Positions 2,682 through 9,450 of a stretch of 64,000 nucleotides of DNA are shown one piece after another. Each line of letters begins with the position of its first letter. The first letter of the stretch is position 1. A program made the position numbers and the translations under genes. Where the stretch lies: positions 1 to 64,000 of IMG/VR virus record IMGVR_UViG_3300043418_000072; one strand, given 5' to 3'. The notes under the pieces are model-generated. The model worked only from the letters and a program-made list of their open reading frames with translations. It did not search any database and had not been told where the DNA came from.

Positions 2682-5168
2682 TTAACTCATGTTACGCATA
2701 AGACGTTCCGTAATGTCCCTATTATCGCCCATAATTCTAATTAAGTCTTCTGTTCTAGACAGTTGCTCTTTAAACAGTGAGGCTAACTCACTAGACGAAT
2801 CCGATGTAGCTGACCTGTTTGCCCCAAACATCTTTAAGAGTTCGCTCATTCCAGCAGACCCTTCTTTGAGGCCACCGTCTTCTTTCATTGGTAGCACTAG
2901 TTCCTTGCCGTGCAGCATAGACGCATATCCAGTCATTGGGCCACTAGCAATACCACCGTTAGCATACGATCCAGTTGGGGTAGCAGCTTTGTCTGGTTTT
3001 GATCCAGTTAGTCCGCCCCAGTTTTGATATAGTCCATAGCCTGCGCCAAGAACGCCGCCAGCTAATGCACCCATTGGGCCAAACATGGCACCCATACTAG
3101 CACCAGATAGTGCTGCACTACCAACACCAAGTCCGGCGCCAAGTTTTTCGTGCCCTGATTCTTTAGCCATGTCGGCACCCTTATCAAGGGCTAGGCCGCC
3201 CACCATACCAGCAATAGATCCCTTGTTGCTTTTTAGGAAATCTCCTGCACCACTCTTAGCACTCTTAGCCATTTCTTTTGCGCCACCACTAATGCCACCA
3301 CTTGCTCCGCCTTTTGCAGCAAATAATGACAGCACTGGTACTATCGCAGTTAATGCTGACACAATACCTGCCATTGCTGTTAACAAAGGCGACTGTGTGC
3401 CTGCGTTAATTCCCAGTTTAGCAAGCTCTTTAACAGAACCTTCAATGTCTTTAATAGTTGTATCAATTGCTTTTGCAAACTGTGGCAAGTTCTGTGCTGC
3501 AATCTTTTCCATTTCGACTGCAAAACGCTGCTGAGTTTCTTGTAGTCCAACTTCTTCTCGCTTGCCGCCCTTGCCTTCGTTCATTTGTTCAAGGATCTTC
3601 TTACGCTCTTCTTCAGTTGCCGCAGTTTGCAACTTACGTGTCAGCTGATCAGTTTTCATTTGATCACGGGCTGCGGCTGCTGCATCAGCATTACCTGCGT
3701 TACCAGCTTGTGCCAATGCTTTGTTAGCCATTGCACCTTTGTGGATTTCGTCTGAGTTCTCACCTTGCACCTTAAGGGTGTTATCTAAGTTTAGTCTACC
3801 TTCTGCTGCCAGGTTAGCAAACTCTTGGTTAGACTTGGCCAGTCCGCTGTTAGTTGCTTCTGCAATAGCAACATCTTTGCTAATAACAGTGCCGTAGATC
3901 ATACGCTCACGCAGGGCTTTGCGCTGAACTTCGCTCATACCCTTCATACTCTCAGTGATGTTGATACGTTCTTGCTCTGTCATTCCATCTAATTGCTGCT
4001 GGAATGCCAAGTTATCATTTTCTTGTCTAATCTGCTCTTGCTTGGCTTTCATATCTTCGCCAGTTAAGTCAGACAATAGCTTTAAATTCTTTGCGTATGT
4101 TTCTGTACGTGCAGCAATTTCTTCATTGCTTGCATTTAGCTTCCCGCTCGGTCCGGCCATCTGAGCCATAACTTGAGCATAAGCTCCTGCTTGCTCTTCC
4201 ATGCCCATGCCTAGAGCCATCATGCCTTTGCGGGCACTTGCTCCACCAGCTTCCATTGCTTTAGCTAGTTTCTTACTGCCTTCACCTACGCCCATTCCCA
4301 ACTGGGACAGTGCATCTTTGTTCTCTCCAACTGCCTTAGAAAACTGTTCTAGTGTTAGTCCTGCAGAGTTAGCAGTTCTAATCATTTCTTTCATGCCGCC
4401 GGCAAACATCGCACCACTGGCACTCATTGTTTGGAAGCCGCCGATTAGCTTTTGAGTCTGTGACAGCATAAAGCCAATACCAGCTTTAGCTAATTCACTT
4501 ACAGTATTACTTAGGAATCCTAGTGCGGCGCCAGCAACTGACGCAGCTATACCAAACTTACCCATTTTGCCACCAGCACCTGCTGTGGCTGCACCAAAAT
4601 CCCCAAGAGCCTTTGCACCAACTTGTGTTGCTGAGTTAGCAGTGTCAATATTGGCTTTCATAAACTCAGATGCCACAGACAGTGCATCACCACCACTTAG
4701 AGCTGCTGTTGCAGATCTAGTAAACGAGCTTGCAACCCCTTTAAGCACAGTGCCTGCCAGTGTACCCATTGAGTTCTTGAAGATTTCGCTGGATTTGTTT
4801 CTAGCATTGGCTTCTTCGAGTATTGCTTTCTCAGCAATTAGTGCAGCTTTCTTCTCTTTGTCCGCGGTATTGTTTACTTCTTTGCGTAAGCTAGCCAGTG
4901 ATTCTTCAAGATCATCAGCTGACATTCCTCCGCTTTTAAACTTTTCCTTAAGGCCCTTTAAGCTAGCGTCAATTTGATCATACGATCGCTTGAACATCTT
5001 ATTGGCTGATTCCATGTTCTTAGCAAAATCCAGCGCAGTCTTCTTAGCGTCGGCTTCACTTTTGCCCTTACCAAGCTCTGTTGCGATATTTTTCTCAATG
5101 GTGTGCCGATATACTTCGCTTATCTTCTTAAACTTTTCTAACTCTTCGTCCAGATTTACATCAGCCAT
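2682..5168 (-). CDS. Tail tape measure protein
   Basis: 828 aa Ala/Gly/Lys-rich, predicted helical, with Gly-rich hydrophobic stretches and a C-terminal YANGGIASGP...HGKELVLP motif. Adjacent to hub chaperone genes. Confidence 0.75.
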   Translation of the reverse strand: MADVNLDEELEKFKKISEVYRHTIEKNIATELGKGKSEADAKKTALDFAKNMESANKMFKRSYDQIDASLKGLKEKFKSGGMSADDLEESLASLRKEVNNTADKEKKAALIAEKAILEEANARNKSSEIFKNSMGTLAGTVLKGVASSFTRSATAALSGGDALSVASEFMKANIDTANSATQVGAKALGDFGAATAGAGGKMGKFGIAASVAGAALGFLSNTVSELAKAGIGFMLSQTQKLIGGFQTMSASGAMFAGGMKEMIRTANSAGLTLEQFSKAVGENKDALSQLGMGVGEGSKKLAKAMEAGGASARKGMMALGMGMEEQAGAYAQVMAQMAGPSGKLNASNEEIAARTETYAKNLKLLSDLTGEDMKAKQEQIRQENDNLAFQQQLDGMTEQERINITESMKGMSEVQRKALRERMIYGTVISKDVAIAEATNSGLAKSNQEFANLAAEGRLNLDNTLKVQGENSDEIHKGAMANKALAQAGNAGNADAAAAARDQMKTDQLTRKLQTAATEEERKKILEQMNEGKGGKREEVGLQETQQRFAVEMEKIAAQNLPQFAKAIDTTIKDIEGSVKELAKLGINAGTQSPLLTAMAGIVSALTAIVPVLSLFAAKGGASGGISGGAKEMAKSAKSGAGDFLKSNKGSIAGMVGGLALDKGADMAKESGHEKLGAGLGVGSAALSGASMGAMFGPMGALAGGVLGAGYGLYQNWGGLTGSKPDKAATPTGSYANGGIASGPMTGYASMLHGKELVLPMKEDGGLKEGSAGMSELLKMFGANRSATSDSSSELASLFKEQLSRTEDLIRIMGDNRDITERLMRNMS

Positions 5169-5220: not shown

Positions 5221-6069
5221 ATGCCAAATTCAAGCATCAACCCACTATCTCGTCACTTTCGCCAACCTGCAATGTACATTAAGTTAACCAGCGGTGGCAA
5301 GTACTGGGCAGACGGTGCGCTAGAGCTTCCGGGTACAGGAGAACTTCCAGTGTTACCAATGACAACTAAAGATGAAATCATCTTACGCACTCCAGACGCA
5401 CTAGTTAACGGAACTAGCGTAGTGCAAGTGATTGAAAGCTGCTGCCCGAACATTAAAGATGCATGGGCTATGCCAAGCATTGACGTTGATTCTACGCTAA
5501 TTGCAATTCGCATCGCTAGCTACGGGCAACACATGCCTATTAGCAGCAAGTGCCCTGCATGTGAAGAAGAAAACGACTATGATATCGATCTAGCAGAGTC
5601 GTTGTCTAAGGTAAAAATTCCAGACTACGTTACCCCAATTGCAGCAGACGAAACGCTGACTATTCAGTTAAAGCCCATGCCTTACTCGCAAGTAAGCAAA
5701 TCAGGCGGTGTTAAACTAGAAGAAGAGAAATTAATCCAGGCCCTTGCTAATCCAGACCTAGATGAAGAATTGCGTATTGCAGAGTACGATAAGCATGTTA
5801 AGAAAATGATTAGTCTTAACTTAGACAACATTGTGGCATGTACTAAAAGCATCACTGCTGACGGGATTGTGGTTACAAACCCTGCACACATTAGAGAATA
5901 CTACGCAAACGCAGAAGCTGGTGTAATGCGTAAAATCAACACACGTATGGAAAGCATCGCAGCTGAAGCTGGTATCAAGCCACATGACGCTACCTGCAAT
6001 GAGTGTGGCCATCAATTCAAACTAGCTGTGGAGTTTGATTACTCTAATTTTTTCGCCAAAGGCTTTTGA
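5221..6069 (+). CDS. gp26: Baseplate hub subunit/assembly chaperone (T4 gp26-like); true start 5221, not 4990
   Basis: NPLSRHFRQP...LPVLPMTTKDEIILRTPDALVNG...IDVDSTLIAIRIASYG plus two CxxC pairs (CPAC, CNEC). SD AGGA before 5221. The ORF-track extension to 4990 is antisense to tape measure. Confidence 0.8.
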   Translation: MPNSSINPLSRHFRQPAMYIKLTSGGKYWADGALELPGTGELPVLPMTTKDEIILRTPDALVNGTSVVQVIESCCPNIKDAWAMPSIDVDSTLIAIRIASYGQHMPISSKCPACEEENDYDIDLAESLSKVKIPDYVTPIAADETLTIQLKPMPYSQVSKSGGVKLEEEKLIQALANPDLDEELRIAEYDKHVKKMISLNLDNIVACTKSITADGIVVTNPAHIREYYANAEAGVMRKINTRMESIAAEAGIKPHDATCNECGHQFKLAVEFDYSNFFAKGF

Positions 6070-6284
6070 TTCTCAACGCAGAAGACAGCATGGCCCTCAT
6101 TGAGGGTTATGAAAAAGAAACAAAAGCCATGAAAGAGGAAGTGCTGCGTATATGTTGGTATATGCGCGGCGGTATAAGTTACAACGATGCCATGCTGTTA
6201 AGCCAGCAGGAAAGAGAACTTATAGATAAAATCGTTAACGATAACATGGAAACAACAAAGAAATCAGGACTTCCGTTCTTCTAA
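6066..6284 (+). CDS. Small hub assembly protein (gp51-like), possibly expressed as a -1 frameshift extension of gp26
   Basis: WYMRGGISYNDAMLLSQQERELI resembles gp51-like chaperone tails. Only a TTG (6066) or a weak ATG (6090) start. Its frame opens exactly at a T TTT TTC heptamer (6048-6054). Confidence 0.6.
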   Translation: MILNAEDSMALIEGYEKETKAMKEEVLRICWYMRGGISYNDAMLLSQQERELIDKIVNDNMETTKKSGLPFF

Positions 6285-6304
6285 GTCTCAGTTATTCATT
6301 TATT

Positions 6305-6810
6305 AAAGTCTAAGGGTTTAAAGATGTCTACGACATCTGTTGTTTCGCTTATCAGCTCACAACATAGGTTAAAGTTTTAATTTGTTAGCTTACATACAGA
6401 GCGAAGCGATTTAATACTTCATCTAGATTAATTGGTCACACTTTGCCCGAGCAGGGCAAAAAATGATTGAACTTCATCTGAGTAGCACAGTCACTTAGCG
6501 TTACAACAATTACAGAGGCGGTCGTCCGGTACCTCGAGTTGCGTCTTTATACGACGGCAGTTTATATACATACGCTAACACATATATAAACGTTAGGGTT
6601 TTTCTCCCTTCTTTTAGCCTTGATTAAATTCTTTTCAAACAGCAAAACCGGTTTTATGAAGGCATATCCGATCGTCGTCCTGTTAAGGATAGTTGCTGAG
6701 TGCTCCATACAGCGTGGAGTCTTCCGTCCCTGTGACCCGAGGTCCAGTTTTCCTAGGCGCCCGACTTTTAGCTGGCGCTTGCCTTATACTGTGTATCCTG
6801 CTTAGACTTT
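6305..6810 (-). ncRNA. Candidate large structured RNA (~506 nt), family not recognised
   Basis: Fills a 530-bp gene-free gap. Bounded by a perfect 10-bp inverted repeat (AAAGTCTAAG 6305-6314 / CTTAGACTTT 6801-6810). At least eight internal stems. One 14-bp helix (6560-6591) has four G-U pairs on the minus strand that would be A-C mismatches on the plus strand. Confidence 0.55.
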
Positions 6811-6815
6811 GTGTC

Positions 6816-7244
6816 TTAAATTTTGTTTATGATGTGGGAGCCATGGACACGAACAGAAATCTGTCCGTTATAATAATCTGTTGTTTCTAATACTTTACGT
6901 TCGAATTGCTCTCTAGCTTCAATGTAACTACATTCAGCCTTTGATTTGCAAATGTGAAGTATCTCTCTGGAAAAGTTTTCGGTGCCTAATTTTGTAATGT
7001 CTGAGGTTAACTCTGTGCTTGAACCATAATATTCTCTCCAATCGCTATCGATCTTTGAGCGGATTTTCTTTTTCTTTTTCGTGCCATTCTTTAATTTCAC
7101 TGTTTTTACAGTTGTCTTAGAGAACTTGGCTAGTTTTTTGCCTATGTACTTTCGGCCAGATAGATTATTTGTAATTAAGTAAACAAACCCAACACAGTCT
7201 TCGGGTAATTCTTCGACGGGTGCGCCTTGATATATCCAGGTCAT
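6816..7244 (-). CDS. Small GIY-YIG nuclease (endonuclease II/DenA-like)
   Basis: GFVYLITN...KYIGKK, YYGSS, FSREIL..C, EAREQF and YYNGQI match the single-domain GIY-YIG fold. Very basic insert KTVKLKNGTKKKKKIRSK. Confidence 0.8.
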   Translation of the reverse strand: MTWIYQGAPVEELPEDCVGFVYLITNNLSGRKYIGKKLAKFSKTTVKTVKLKNGTKKKKKIRSKIDSDWREYYGSSTELTSDITKLGTENFSREILHICKSKAECSYIEAREQFERKVLETTDYYNGQISVRVHGSHIINKI

Positions 7245-7277: not shown

Positions 7278-8510
7278 TTATGCCTTGATGCTAGTAGTAA
7301 AATAATTTGTTATTTGGGGCTGTTTAAGCCATTGCCATAATGTTAGCTTCTCGTACAATTCCTGCGTTAAAACAGGATCGCCTGGTAGCTCTAGTGCCTT
7401 GATGATTGCCTTAATTTCGTTGTCTATGTGTTGCTTGAACCATGTAGGGTCGCGTGGGTTGCTATCTGCTGGTGCAGGTTCGCTATGCTCCCATTTGCTA
7501 TATTGTTCAAGCAACCGTTTTTTAATATCTTGTGGTAAGTGTTGTATCTGTTGATATGCTGGACGAACTAACATGTTAGTCATTACATCAACTTCTCTTG
7601 ATACACACCAGCGGTATAAATCGTCTAATGTGTGTACACTCAGTGCGCTAGGTACTGCACGTACTGTAACATAGACGTGTCCTTGTTTGCGATGCTTTAG
7701 GTATAAATCAATATTGTCTAATACTGTTTGCGTACTCGAACCCTGTCGAATCAAATCGTTAAGTTCCCCGGTGCATTCAATACTAACACCAACGTCTACG
7801 TGTCTGAATGCGTTTAGTTTCTGCATCAGTGATTGATTAAACACCGTTCCGTTGGTAGTAAATCCTAGATATATGTTGTTCTTGCCCGCAAGTAGCAGGC
7901 GGTCAATTAGCTGTTCAAAGCGAGGGTTAAGTAAGGGTTCTCCACCTATTAAGTGTACAAACTCCAAGTCTTTTGACCCGCAGATGTAGTCAGTTACATG
8001 ATCCCATGCTTGTTGATCTTCAGTCCAGTTCATACGGGCAGCACCTCTAAAGGTCCCTGCTTTAATTTCTTGGACTGCAATCTTACTGCTAGCCATTGGC
8101 GTACACATTCTGCAAGCAAGATTACATTCGTTACCTAAGCTGATATGAAAGCTGTTAATACGTGGTGCAATATTTTCGTACTTGCGTTGATCAAATGTTT
8201 TGTAGAAGTTAACGGGATCAATTCCGTCTTTGTGATTTTCTTTAACTCGTTTGCTACTAGACCCCATTGCATCTTCATGATAACACATAGCGCACAGGGG
8301 CTCATTGATGCCCGACAATTTGTTAACACGGGCAGCATGTTGGTGTTCACTAGCAACCCACTCGGGTATAGTCATGATATGTACATTGTACTGTGCAGCC
8401 GCAGGCGTCCCATATACACGGTTGGGCTGTGCTCCACAGGTATGATAAGTGCCATCTGCATTGATATGCACTTCCTTCCATGGCACATTACAAAATACTT
8501 TATCGATCAT
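7278..8510 (-). CDS. Radical SAM protein with N-terminal twitch/SPASM-like Cys module
   Basis: CNLACRMC motif, GGEP and TTNGT core motifs. N-terminal FCNVPW...TC...CAMC. Confidence 0.88.
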   Translation of the reverse strand: MIDKVFCNVPWKEVHINADGTYHTCGAQPNRVYGTPAAAQYNVHIMTIPEWVASEHQHAARVNKLSGINEPLCAMCYHEDAMGSSSKRVKENHKDGIDPVNFYKTFDQRKYENIAPRINSFHISLGNECNLACRMCTPMASSKIAVQEIKAGTFRGAARMNWTEDQQAWDHVTDYICGSKDLEFVHLIGGEPLLNPRFEQLIDRLLLAGKNNIYLGFTTNGTVFNQSLMQKLNAFRHVDVGVSIECTGELNDLIRQGSSTQTVLDNIDLYLKHRKQGHVYVTVRAVPSALSVHTLDDLYRWCVSREVDVMTNMLVRPAYQQIQHLPQDIKKRLLEQYSKWEHSEPAPADSNPRDPTWFKQHIDNEIKAIIKALELPGDPVLTQELYEKLTLWQWLKQPQITNYFTTSIKA

Positions 8511-9450
8511 TTCTACACTTTATATTACAAACTTCTAACGGGAACAGTTCTAATCTAGTTAAAAACTCTTCCCATAATGGATCCGCAAGGATGTCAGACA
8601 AGGGTCGTGTCTTGATACTTAAACGATCGCGATACTTTTCGACAAAATCGTTTTGCTGATATCCGCTGTTGAACCAAGGACAGGGAAACACTAGTCCGTT
8701 AACGTTAATGAACATTTCCTTTTTCCAGTTCAAGCACTTGGCCCAACTATGCACATCCTTTTGATACTGGATATCAATTACCATGCCACGGGCACTGAGT
8801 GCGCCTTTTTTCTTTTGATAGTTAGGCACATTAATAACAATCTCAGGGCATAATGGATCGACCCCGTTAACTGCATAGCGACCGTCAAACTTGGTACTAT
8901 GCACCTCATTGAACTCGTCGACTCCCGCAGCCCGTGCAACTTCTTTGATCTCCCTGGTGTGGTGCTCGTTGAAGTTAAAAATAATGTAACTCCAAATGAT
9001 CCTACACGGCGACGCTGCACGTAGACTCTTGATACCAGCAATGATACTGTCAAAATTGCTATTGACTCGATATAGTTCATTGCTCGCTTGATCCCACCCG
9101 TCTACGCTAAATGTAACTGCATCATGCTCTGTTAGCATGTGCCCTAGTCGATCCCACCAGTCTACGCTCTTGTAGCTACCATTGGTTACAATCTTAACTT
9201 GTATGCGATTGAGTTTTAGATACTCAACGATTTCTAGGAACTCTGTTGCATAGATTGGATCGCCTACATCGCCGCAGAACAAGAATGTCTTCATGTTAGT
9301 TAGCATAGACGGAGGAAACGCCAACATGAATTCATGTAGCGTTATTTCTCTATTCAGTTGTTCGGGCTTTAATTCAGTACGAGGGCAGCGTGGACATTTT
9401 AGTGTACACTTGCTGCTGATCTCGATATGAATGTCTTGTAGGTTAAACAA
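8500..9450 (-). CDS. Radical SAM protein with C-terminal SPASM/twitch domain
   Basis: CTLKCPRC, GDVGDP, VTNGS, FSVDG. C-terminal C...GLVFPC...CNIKC. TTG start overlaps the gp46 stop. Confidence 0.88.
   Translation of the reverse strand: MFNLQDIHIEISSKCTLKCPRCPRTELKPEQLNREITLHEFMLAFPPSMLTNMKTFLFCGDVGDPIYATEFLEIVEYLKLNRIQVKIVTNGSYKSVDWWDRLGHMLTEHDAVTFSVDGWDQASNELYRVNSNFDSIIAGIKSLRAASPCRIIWSYIIFNFNEHHTREIKEVARAAGVDEFNEVHSTKFDGRYAVNGVDPLCPEIVINVPNYQKKKGALSARGMVIDIQYQKDVHSWAKCLNWKKEMFINVNGLVFPCPWFNSGYQQNDFVEKYRDRLSIKTRPLSDILADPLWEEFLTRLELFPLEVCNIKCRNDR

What the first reader, a model, noticed from the sequence alone, without database searches (positions are those of the whole stretch)
6305..6810. 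Unrecognised ~506-nt structured RNA candidate closed by a perfect 10-bp terminal helix
Seen: this is the only large gene-free gap in a tightly packed window. Its ends are an exact inverted repeat (AAAGTCTAAG 6305-6314, CTTAGACTTT 6801-6810), starting 5 nt after the GIY-YIG stop. Internal stems: 6322-6338; 6345-6358 with 6399-6409; TTTGCCC/GGGCAAA 6442-6460; 6560-6591; palindrome 6644-6655; 6678-6689; 6703-6719; 6757-6778. There is a 7-bp long-range pair (6434-6440 with 6731-6737) and a 9-nt direct repeat ACTTCATCT (6416, 6471) flanking one hairpin. The 6560-6591 helix has four G-U pairs only on the minus strand, the same strand as the upstream operon. Known: large phages and prophages encode big ornate RNAs (GOLLD, ROOL), and some origins use long structured primer RNAs (ColE1 RNA II, T4 origin R-loops). 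Inference: this is a discrete processed ncRNA of a family I cannot name. Alternatives are an RNA-primed replication origin with the AT-rich 6285-6420 stretch as unwinding element, or a MITE.
Basis: partly seen in the sequence, partly recalled or inferred. Interest (0 to 1): 0.9.

Follow-up and report, generated by a model that had tools for sequence, protein, structure and literature searches.

The report
Large phage RNA, partly known motif
The gene-free gap encodes a real, highly folded non-coding RNA of about 466 bases in an uncultured T4-like phage; its first third is the catalogued Polynucleobacter-1 motif, while the rest, including two identical short segments that always mutate together, is uncatalogued and of unknown function.

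Summary
The gap holds a real structured RNA on the minus strand, at about 6318-6783.

- **Known part.** Its 5' 147 nt (6637-6783) is a full-length match to Rfam RF01718, Polynucleobacter-1 (109.5 bits against a cut-off of 37). "Unrecognised" is therefore only partly right.
- **Uncatalogued part.** The other ~320 nt have no Rfam match but are conserved in over 150 uncultured phage loci. They carry many compensatory base-pair changes and a 6-bp pseudoknot.
- **Conserved core.** The last ~170 nt (6313-6496) are the most widely conserved part. In other phages this core is joined to two unrelated 5' domains.
- **Setting.** The RNA sits at a fixed place: downstream of gp47, gp46 and a 142-aa GIY-YIG nuclease gene, and convergent with baseplate genes. 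It is not mobile.
- **Oddest feature.** Two 11-nt single-stranded repeats (6472-6482 and 6417-6427) change at four positions always in parallel. No partner was found inside the RNA.
- **Function.** Unknown. My best guess is a trans-acting RNA whose twin segments read one outside partner, possibly together with the adjacent nuclease.

The replication-origin and MITE readings are rejected.

The parts
6318..6783 (-). Whole conserved structured RNA, about 466 nt
   Evidence: A profile built from 25 homologues matches 6783->6318. The alignment shows conserved blocks with compensatory changes throughout.
6637..6783 (-). 5' domain: Rfam RF01718 Polynucleobacter-1 (helices P1-P6)
   Evidence: cmscan gives 109.5 bits against a gathering score of 37, with model positions 1-141 of 141 matched. 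Fifteen of 15 class-1 relatives also hit this family.
6560..6591 (-). P8, a long hairpin whose 6-nt loop (6573-6578) forms the pseudoknot
   Evidence: 93-95% canonical pairing; 11 of 13 pairs show compensatory double changes.
6495..6500 (-). 3' strand of the pseudoknot, pairing with the P8 loop at 6573-6578
   Evidence: 94% canonical pairing; all 6 pairs are compensated across 62 unique sequences, against 39% in the shifted control.
6515..6535 (-). P10 hairpin holding the near-invariant GGUACCGG..ACCGCC motif; enclosed by P11 (6504-6507 with 6538-6541)
   Evidence: P10 is 97-100% canonical. P11 is 91% canonical with 3 of 4 pairs compensated. The motif is shared by classes 1 and 2.
6313..6496 (-). 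3' core: r1, hairpin P12, r2, linker, P13/P14, P15
   Evidence: Covariance model R1 finds a single hit in the window at 117 bits. It finds one hit in each of 100 of 100 viral loci across all three classes.
6472..6482 (-). Twin segment r1 (CUCAGAUGAAG)
   Evidence: Its four variable positions always equal those of r2. It is predicted single-stranded in the consensus folds.
6417..6427 (-). Twin segment r2 (UCUAGAUGAAG)
   Evidence: Same as r1. The identical-base counts are AA53/GG42, GG86/CC10, GG61/AA37 and TT66/AA26, with 0 to about 6 discordant rows per position pair among 99 sequences.
6442..6460 (-). P12 hairpin between the twin segments
   Evidence: 95% canonical pairing. It is fully re-coded between classes, UUGCCC/GGGCAA against UUCACCG/CGGUGAA.
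6339..6363 (-). P13/P14: a helix interrupted by the conserved UGAGC...GCGAAA internal loop
   Evidence: the count of structure pairs gives 90% and 100% paired, with every pair compensated.
6322..6338 (-). P15 terminal hairpin, the probable 3' end; also matches the terminator-like pattern when read on the + strand
   Evidence: 99.3% paired, with 7 of 7 pairs compensated.
6399..6409 (-). Optional conserved module UCGCUUCGCUC in the variable linker
   Evidence: Present in 24 of 99 unique RNAs from all three classes, almost invariant, and not covarying with P14.
6801..6810 (-). 5' arm of the 10-bp closing helix, specific to this lineage
   Evidence: Exact repeat. One uncompensated change in 98%-identity relatives; absent in 90%-identity relatives.
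6305..6314 (-). 3' arm of the closing helix, specific to this lineage
   Evidence: Same evidence as the 5' arm.
6816..7244 (-). 142-aa nuclease consisting only of a SegE-type GIY-YIG domain, immediately upstream of the RNA
   Evidence: Pfam PF19835, E 2.9e-35. More than 586 viral loci and more than 8000 proteins, nearly all 142-144 aa.
6066..6284 (+). Conserved 72-aa ORF that closes the convergent baseplate operon and bounds the gap
   Evidence: ORF list. A homologous 72-aa ORF follows the gp51-like gene in L102 and L327.

Best explanation
**Shown**
- Window 6318-6783 (minus strand) encodes a structured non-coding RNA of about 466 nt.
- It lies at the 3' end of the operon gp47, gp46, two radical-SAM genes and a GIY-YIG nuclease, in an uncultured T4-like phage.
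- It is modular:
  - a 5' domain that is the known Polynucleobacter-1 motif;
  - a middle part with a long hairpin whose loop forms a pseudoknot;
  - a ~170-nt 3' core found in every relative examined.
- The core consists of twin 11-nt single-stranded segments flanking a hairpin, then a helix with a UGA/GAAA internal loop, then a terminal hairpin.

**Inferred**
- The RNA is made by read-through of the nuclease gene. In many relatives it begins 1-10 nt after that gene's stop codon.
- It acts in trans as a stable RNA.
- Its twin segments each contact a copy of one and the same outside partner. This could be a nucleic acid read by base pairing, or two subunits of one protein. That would explain why the segments must stay identical while still being free to change.
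- The leading but unproven candidate setting is DNA recombination or nuclease biology, with the adjacent small nuclease as partner.

**My probabilities**

| Claim | Probability |
|---|---|
| Real structured RNA that extends RF01718 | ~0.95 |
| Twin segments read a common external partner | ~0.55 |
| That function involves the neighbouring nuclease | ~0.25 |
For: **Identity**
- Full-length RF01718 hit, also found in 15 of 15 class-1 relatives.

**Extension beyond the Rfam model**
- blastn and a profile search show conservation as far as 6318.

**Structure**
- RNAalifold predicts 70 pairs, 42 of them compensated.
- Per-helix counts on 62 unique RNAs are 91-100% canonical, against 20-50% in shifted controls. 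The pseudoknot has 6 of 6 pairs compensated.
- The 3' helices are 96.8% paired against 68.4% in shuffles, with a covariation score of 0.696 against 0.195. None of 500 shuffles reached the observed value.

**Core and modularity**
- Model R1 hits each of 100 loci once.
- Class-2 and class-3 loci lack any Rfam hit but keep the core.

**Twin segments**
- Parallel identity holds at four positions. Within class 1 the mutual information is 0.84-1.24 bits, with the twin position only and with no other column.
- At least 21, 4, 13 and about 10 changes map onto a tree. On well-supported branches there are 5+3+3 contrasts: r2 followed r1 in nearly all, did not change in the rest, and never went the opposite way.
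- In L102 both segments carry the same 2-nt deletion.

**Link to a nuclease**
- The RNA lies downstream on the same strand in about 66 of 69 GIY loci.
- The GIY gene lies upstream in about 62 of 72 RNA loci.
- In L102 an unrelated PD-(D/E)xK nuclease occupies the same position.
Against: **No direct evidence**
- There are no transcript data. The ends, the processing and the stability of the RNA are all inferred.

**No partner identified**
- No complementary segment lies between 900 nt upstream and 500 nt downstream.
- There is no convincing enrichment of matching sites in the 64-kb window.

**Weak or missing link to the nuclease**
- Variants of the twin segments do not covary with residues of the GIY protein (mutual information at most 0.28 bit).
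- The nuclease and the RNA each occur without the other:
  - GIY homologues in cultured phages (Melnitz, S-SSM7) have no RNA;
  - three close GIY loci lack it;
  - L093 has the RNA after MazG-like and GroES-like genes rather than a nuclease;
  - unrelated ORFs separate the nuclease gene and the RNA by about 1 kb in roughly 10% of loci.

**Tolerated loss**
- One natural variant, L085, has lost r1 and the hairpin.
Confidence: 0.5

Rival explanations
1. A free-standing large phage RNA that works on its own, for example as a self-assembling or scaffold RNA like ROOL and GOLLD, or as a decoy or sponge for a host factor. On this reading its position next to the nuclease gene is only conserved synteny at the end of an operon.
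For: - The RNA and the nuclease each occur without the other.
- Twin-segment variants are independent of the GIY protein sequence.
- Unrelated ORFs can be inserted between gene and RNA.
- The fold is complex, includes a pseudoknot and has swappable 5' domains.
- Large ornate RNAs associated with phages are known to form RNA-only assemblies (PMC12286853, listed; abstract only read).
Against: - The association with a small nuclease gene is about 90-96% in both directions.
- It survives replacement of the GIY-YIG nuclease by a PD-(D/E)xK nuclease.
- No self-complementary or intermolecular pairing element was identified.
Confidence: 0.3
2. A cis-acting 3' untranslated element. It would protect the operon's mRNA from 3' exonucleases, or act as a two-way terminator between convergent operons.
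For: - It sits at a convergent junction, directly after the last gene.
- The terminal hairpin P15 matches the terminator-like pattern on the + strand.
Against: - About 466 nt, with some 15 conserved helices, a pseudoknot and near-invariant single-stranded motifs, is far more than termination or protection needs.
- In L093 the RNA lies between genes of the same orientation.
- The concerted change of the twin segments has no explanation on this reading.
Confidence: 0.1
3. An RNA inhibitor of the adjacent nuclease, in the manner of a type III toxin-antitoxin pair. The nuclease would cut at the two repeats and stay bound to the released 55-nt hairpin unit.
For: - Two identical direct repeats flank a hairpin.
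- The RNA is adjacent to a potentially toxic nuclease.
Against: - GIY-YIG enzymes are DNA nucleases as far as is known (my own knowledge).
- There are only two repeats, placed downstream of the gene, not a tandem array upstream.
- There is no covariation between protein and RNA.
- Homologous nucleases do without the RNA.
Confidence: 0.05
4. An RNA-primed replication origin, or a MITE, as the first reader proposed as alternatives.
For: - The window has an exact terminal inverted repeat.
- An AT-rich stretch lies at 6285-6420.
- In T4 one origin lies near the baseplate-hub genes (my own knowledge).
Against: - There is one copy per genome, at a fixed syntenic site.
- The inverted repeat is missing from most relatives.
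- The AT-rich stretch largely coincides with the least conserved part of the region.
- Conservation follows RNA base pairing, with G-U pairs on one strand only.
- There is no GC-skew signal at the site.
Confidence: 0.03

Closest known systems
Polynucleobacter-1 RNA motif (Rfam RF01718; Weinberg et al. 2010, PMC2864571)
   Same: - The 5' 147 nt are a full-length, high-scoring member.
- The context is as originally described: downstream of a gene family with possible homology to cyanophage P-SSM2 locus PSSM2_218, in freshwater or estuarine metagenomes.
   Different: - The Rfam model covers only about 30% of the conserved RNA.
- The more widely conserved part is the 3' core, which is not in Rfam and also occurs with two other 5' domains.
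- The original paper found no copy in any sequenced purified phage. Here the RNA lies in T4-like viral contigs of up to 354 kb.
- The paper's main table rates the motif a likely cis-regulatory RNA. There is usually no downstream gene on the same strand for it to regulate.
HEARO / omega-RNAs of IscB and TnpB (the OMEGA systems)
   Same: A large structured RNA genetically tied to a small nuclease gene. As with the TnpB RNA, it starts at or just after the 3' end of the nuclease ORF.
   Different: - The nuclease is GIY-YIG (or PD-(D/E)xK), not RuvC/HNH.
- There is no transposon: the position is fixed and syntenic.
- There is no hypervariable terminal guide. Only four positions vary, in two internal 11-nt segments.
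- The nuclease family also exists without the RNA.
GOLLD, ROOL and other large ornate RNAs associated with phages
   Same: Several hundred nucleotides long, with many conserved helices and pseudoknots; encoded by phages; function unknown.
   Different: - No sequence or structure match.
- No neighbouring tRNA genes.
- Smaller.
- Tied to a nuclease gene.
Type III toxin-antitoxin RNAs (ToxI)
   Same: Direct repeats in an RNA encoded next to a nuclease gene.
   Different: There are two repeats 55 nt apart inside a large fold, downstream of a DNA-type nuclease. There is no tandem array and no ToxN-type RNase.

Membership tests
Rfam RF01718 Polynucleobacter-1 | Covariance-model score at or above the curated gathering score (37 bits) | tested here: met
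   109.5 bits, E about 1e-24.
Rfam RF01718 Polynucleobacter-1 | Whole model matched, with its helices supported by covariation | tested here: met
   Model positions 1-141 of 141 are matched. P1, P3, P4 and P6 are 93-100% canonical with compensatory changes. P2 is weaker, at 79%.
Rfam RF01718 Polynucleobacter-1 | Lies downstream of a GOS11034 / PSSM2_218-like gene | tested here: inconclusive
   It lies downstream of a PF19835 GIY-YIG gene whose homologues occur in 339 Synechococcus and 22 Prochlorococcus phage records, plus 46 labelled Cyanophage. Whether this gene family is the same as GOS11034 was not tested directly.
OMEGA RNA-guided nucleases (IscB / TnpB with omega-RNA) | RuvC (with or without HNH) nuclease | tested here: not met
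   Pfam finds only SegE_GIY-YIG.
OMEGA RNA-guided nucleases (IscB / TnpB with omega-RNA) | Carried inside an IS200/IS605-type mobile element in varied genomic contexts | tested here: not met
   The gene order gp47, gp46, nuclease, RNA, then convergent baseplate genes is conserved across about 80 loci.
OMEGA RNA-guided nucleases (IscB / TnpB with omega-RNA) | Hypervariable guide segment at one end of a constant scaffold | tested here: not met
   Variation is limited to four positions in two internal segments. The ends are a conserved hairpin and class-specific domains.
GOLLD / ROOL | Match to the family covariance model | tested here: not met
   No hit, even at E up to 10 on the region.
Group I intron carrying a GIY-YIG homing endonuclease | Intron ribozyme core, with flanking exons of a single gene | tested here: not met
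   No group I hit. The flanking genes are convergent, separate genes.
MITE | Terminal inverted repeats present in all copies, and multiple dispersed copies | tested here: not met
   The inverted repeat occurs only in the closest relatives. There is a single copy per window and per locus.
RNA-primed origin (ColE1 RNA II, T4 oriF/oriG type) | Persistent RNA-DNA hybrid at an unwinding element; replication starts here | not testable with these tools
   Indirect evidence only: the AT-rich stretch is poorly conserved, and conservation follows RNA pairing.
Type III toxin-antitoxin | Tandem array of RNA repeats processed by a ToxN/AbiE-type endoribonuclease | tested here: not met
   Two repeats 55 nt apart, with no tandem array. 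The protein is GIY-YIG.

The most novel reading that the evidence does not exclude
The RNA is the nucleic-acid-recognition subunit of a previously undescribed phage ribonucleoprotein nuclease. A GIY-YIG nuclease that lacks any DNA-binding domain (or, interchangeably, a PD-(D/E)xK nuclease) would be aimed by two identical 11-nt guide-like segments. These could read two copies of one target, for example the two strands of a symmetric site or two aligned DNA molecules during recombination. The swappable 5' domains would then add a second layer of specificity.
Probability: 0.12. Interest if true: 0.9.

Novelty: new variant of a known kind. Interest (0 to 1): 0.62.

Why it matters
Polynucleobacter-1 has been in Rfam since 2010 as a 141-position motif of unknown function. 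A full-text search found its name only in the paper that first described it.

- **It is a fragment.** The data here show it is the 5' end of an RNA about three times larger, carried by hundreds of uncultured T4-like phages. The truly conserved unit is an uncatalogued 3' core that can be combined with at least three different 5' domains.
- **It gives a handle on function.** Two single-stranded segments are held identical through at least ten separate joint changes. That pattern points to one outside partner read twice, and it turns "function unknown" into a testable question.
- **It recalls HEARO.** The steady neighbourhood of a small nuclease that has no DNA-binding domain is reminiscent of how HEARO RNA looked before it was shown to be the guide RNA of IscB. 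Here, however, the link is weaker.

At the least, the Rfam family should be rebuilt as a larger, modular family and labelled as phage-encoded.

Tried and rejected
**Searches that found nothing**
- blastn of the gap against 50,697 phage records: no match. The RNA is not in cultured phages.
- PDB sequence search and profile search with the nuclease: no relatives.
- An AlphaFold2 model (pLDDT 87) searched with Foldseek against the PDB: no meaningful match, TM at most 0.2. The idea that the protein is a T4 endonuclease II (DenA) homologue could therefore be neither supported nor refuted.
- Rfam on 18 class-2 and class-3 loci: nothing.

**Searches that were poorly aimed**
- The 16-base motif scanned against bacterial and archaeal genomes: nearly all hits are chance matches in GC-rich genomes. 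Only one short MAG contig (L303) is a true copy. The pattern was too short for that collection, so the Polynucleobacter genome copy reported in 2010 was not recovered.

**Looking for a partner of the twin segments**
- Inside the RNA and 900 nt upstream: only wobble-rich matches to a strand already paired in P4.
- Elsewhere in the window: the 8-mer occurs 8 times against 1.7 expected. Two of these are the RNA itself. The rest look like ordinary Asp-Glu coding sequence.
- Covariation with the nuclease protein: none.

**Ideas tested and dropped**
- The variable ORFs inserted beside the RNA might be homing endonucleases: no Pfam or PHROG support, so the idea was dropped.
- The twin repeats might be target-site duplications of a small insert: the single-unit allele L085 looks like a deletion between the two repeat units, and it is 1 locus in 100.
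- Hammerhead, C/D-box, tRNA-like and small-ORF readings of the twin segments were considered by eye and rejected, because the variants break the required consensus.
- A family-wide closing helix: rejected.
Full report
**1. What is in the window**

The gap is real.
- On the + strand a gp51-like baseplate-hub gene (PF12322) and a 72-aa ORF end at 6284.
- On the - strand a 142-aa ORF (6816-7244) ends at 6816.
- That ORF is a bare SegE-type GIY-YIG nuclease domain (PF19835, E 2.9e-35).
- Upstream of it on the same strand lie two radical-SAM/SPASM genes and a gp46 (SbcC-like) gene.

The window therefore comes from a T4-like phage. Its own contig is 354 kb long. The window has no tRNA genes.

**2. 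The Rfam result**

A scan of the whole window against Rfam 15 gives one hit above threshold: RF01718, Polynucleobacter-1 RNA, at 6637-6783 on the minus strand. It scores 109.5 bits against a gathering score of 37 and covers the whole model.

The only paper in the library that names this motif is its 2010 description.
- Its supplement says the motif lies mostly downstream of genes of family GOS11034, with possible homology to cyanophage P-SSM2 locus PSSM2_218.
- It says the 3' half is not always detected.
- It says no copy was found in any sequenced purified phage.

Nothing in Rfam matches 6305-6636.

**3. The conserved RNA is much longer than the Rfam model**

The GIY-YIG protein is very common.
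- More than 586 IMG/VR loci encode it, at 70-86% identity among the 80 loci kept.
- More than 8000 proteins match it, almost all 142-144 aa long.

The DNA downstream of the gene is conserved as far as window position ~6318.
- An alignment of 25 loci shows conserved blocks and obvious compensatory changes all the way to the hairpin at 6322-6338.
- RNAalifold predicts 70 pairs, 42 of them with double changes.

I then counted pairs helix by helix on 62 unique full-length relatives.
- P1, P3, P4, P6, P8, P9, P10, P11, P12 and P14 are 91-100% canonical, against 20-57% (74% for P12) when the partner column is shifted by one.
- A pseudoknot between the 6-nt loop of P8 (6573-6578) and 6495-6500 is 94% canonical, with all six pairs compensated.
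- Near-invariant G-U pairs fix the strand as minus.

For the last three helices, a covariance-model alignment of 99 distinct sequences gives 96.8% paired against 68.4% in shuffles. The covariation score is 0.696 against 0.195, and none of 500 shuffles reached it. Slid controls give 32-44%.

No ORF is conserved in the region.

**4. The RNA is modular**

The relatives fall into three classes.

| Class | 5' part | Rfam RF01718 hit | 3' core |
|---|---|---|---|
| 1 (includes the window) | Polynucleobacter-1 domain | 15 of 15 tested | present |
| 2 | a different, well-conserved domain of about 185 nt with its own covarying helices | 0 of 18 for classes 2 and 3 together | present |
| 3 | a third 5' and middle part, preceded by an 88-aa ORF | as above | present, but without the GGUACCGG hairpin |

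- A covariance model of the core (window 6313-6496) finds exactly one hit in the window, at 117 bits.
- It finds one hit in each of 100 viral loci from all three classes.
- On a tree of the GIY proteins the RNA class changes at least 19 times, against about 44 for shuffled labels. This suggests that 5' domains are exchanged by recombination, although the tree is weakly resolved.

**5. Genomic setting**

The position is syntenic, not mobile. The order is gp47, gp46, optional radical-SAM or unknown genes, the GIY-YIG gene, the RNA, and then a convergent block that ends with the gp51-like gene.

The association holds in both directions.
- About 66 of 69 GIY loci with enough downstream DNA have the RNA on the same strand. 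In many class-1 loci it starts 1-10 nt after the stop codon.
- About 62 of 72 loci found through an RNA motif alone have the GIY gene upstream.

In L102 the same slot, between gp46 and the RNA, holds an unrelated PDDEXK_15 nuclease (PF24608; PHROG label "RusA-like Holliday junction resolvase").

The link is not obligatory.
- Homologues in cultured phages are at most 50% identical. They include Methylophilales phage Melnitz and many cyanophages, where the gene is mislabelled "NAD synthetase". They sit in other contexts and have no RNA.
- Three close GIY loci lack the RNA.
- L093 has the RNA after MazG-like and GroES-like genes.
- ORFs of unknown function separate gene and RNA by about 1 kb in roughly a tenth of loci.

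**6. The terminal helix**

The 10-bp inverted repeat is exact.
- A repeat of that length occurs somewhere in 10% of shuffles of the gap. None of 500 shuffles had both arms near the ends.
- Comparison does not support it as a feature of the family:
  - relatives at 98% protein identity carry an uncompensated A-to-C change in one arm;
  - relatives at 90% identity lack both arms;
  - over 62 RNAs the 5' and 3' flanks pair no better than flanks taken from different loci.
- It may well form in this phage as a closing stem specific to its lineage, but it does not define the RNA.

**7. The twin segments**

- r1 is CUC-R-S-AU-R-A-W-G, at 6472-6482.
- r2 is UCU-R-S-AU-R-A-W-N, at 6417-6427.

The four variable positions carry the same base in both segments. 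Counts over 99 distinct sequences:

| Position | Identical-base pairs | Discordant rows |
|---|---|---|
| 4 | AA 53, GG 42 | 3 |
| 5 | GG 86, CC 10, AA 1, TT 1 | 0 |
| 8 | GG 61, AA 37 | 0 |
| 10 | TT 66, AA 26 | ~6 |

- Rarer variants also change in both segments: G-to-A at position 5, G at position 10, and a 2-nt deletion in L102.
- Six of the eight possible combinations at positions 4, 8 and 10 occur. With the rarer variants, that implies about ten separate joint changes.
- On a tree built without these columns the minimum numbers of changes are 21, 4, 13 and about 10. On well-supported branches alone there are 5+3+3 contrasts. In nearly all of them r2 followed r1, in the rest it did not change, and it never went the opposite way.
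- These positions share high mutual information only with their twin. No Watson-Crick partner column exists in the core or in the full class-1 RNA.
- No complementary stretch lies nearby.
- They do not covary with any residue of the GIY protein.

Identical-base covariation is not what pairing between the two segments would give. Gene conversion over 11 nt seems unlikely, because the spacers before the segments stay different.

The simplest reading is that both segments are read by one and the same outside partner. This is an inference.

**8. How it most likely works**

Shown: a conserved, pseudoknotted, modular RNA of about 466 nt on the minus strand at the end of a recombination-gene operon.

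Inferred:
- It is co-transcribed with the nuclease gene. No conserved promoter motif is evident by eye in the few bases before the RNA in the alignment.
- It acts in trans.
- It uses its twin segments to bind two copies of one partner.

Whether the neighbouring nuclease is that partner's effector is open. Adjacency, and the replacement of one nuclease fold by another, argue for it. The independent occurrence of each, and the lack of protein-RNA covariation, argue against it.

My probabilities:

| Reading | Probability |
|---|---|
| Real RNA that extends RF01718 | ~0.95 |
| A common external partner | ~0.55 |
| The nuclease is involved | ~0.25 |
| Free-standing RNA | ~0.3 |
| Mere 3'-UTR or terminator | ~0.1 |
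| Antitoxin-like RNA | ~0.05 |
| Origin or MITE | ~0.03 |

**9. Comparison and verdict**

It is a member of RF01718 in its 5' domain. It resembles HEARO and the omega-RNAs only in being an RNA tied to a nuclease gene, and it fails their defining features. It resembles GOLLD and ROOL only as a large phage RNA of unknown function.

As far as Rfam 15 and the searchable literature show, four things are new:
- the true size of the RNA;
- the 3' core and the alternative 5' domains;
- the placement in T4-like phage genomes;
- the concerted twin segments.

I rate it a new variant of a known kind, interest 0.62.

Noticed in passing
window 7278-9450 (- strand): Two adjacent radical-SAM/SPASM genes (410 and 316 aa) lie between gp46 and the GIY-YIG gene. 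In related phages this slot holds a varying set of genes. It looks like a hotspot for accessory genes inside the recombination operon.
   Followed up: partly
L102:3893-4423 (- strand): In one relative a 176-aa PDDEXK_15 nuclease (PHROG label: RusA-like Holliday junction resolvase) replaces the GIY-YIG gene in exactly the same slot upstream of the RNA. Both twin segments there carry the same 2-nt deletion.
   Followed up: partly
L085:8530-8560: A natural variant of the RNA has lost r1 and hairpin P12. The loss looks like a deletion between the two repeat units, and the rest of the RNA is intact. It is 1 of the 100 loci examined.
   Followed up: partly
window 6399-6409 (- strand) and 24 of 99 relatives: An almost invariant 11-nt module, UCGCUUCGCUC, sits in the otherwise variable linker in about a quarter of the RNAs of all three classes. 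It is complementary to the P14 motif but does not covary with it.
   Followed up: partly
window 6066-6284 (+ strand); L102:3143-3361; L327:3411-3629: A conserved 72-aa ORF ending in ...TTKKSGLPFF follows the gp51-like baseplate gene. It has no Pfam or PHROG match.
   Followed up: no
L030:4427-4693 and other class-3 loci: An 88-aa ORF with a CxxC-type motif lies between the GIY-YIG gene and the class-3 RNA. It has no family match.
   Followed up: partly
window 2682-5168 (- strand): An 828-aa ORF next to the baseplate-hub gene has no Pfam or PHROG match. It is conserved in close relatives, where 828- to 858-aa genes are called.
   Followed up: no
Phage records (for example S-SSM7 SSSM7_239, T4-GC 213): The small GIY-YIG protein family is widely annotated as "NAD synthetase" in cyanophage and other T4-like genomes. 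This appears to be a propagated misannotation of a SegE-type GIY-YIG domain.
   Followed up: partly
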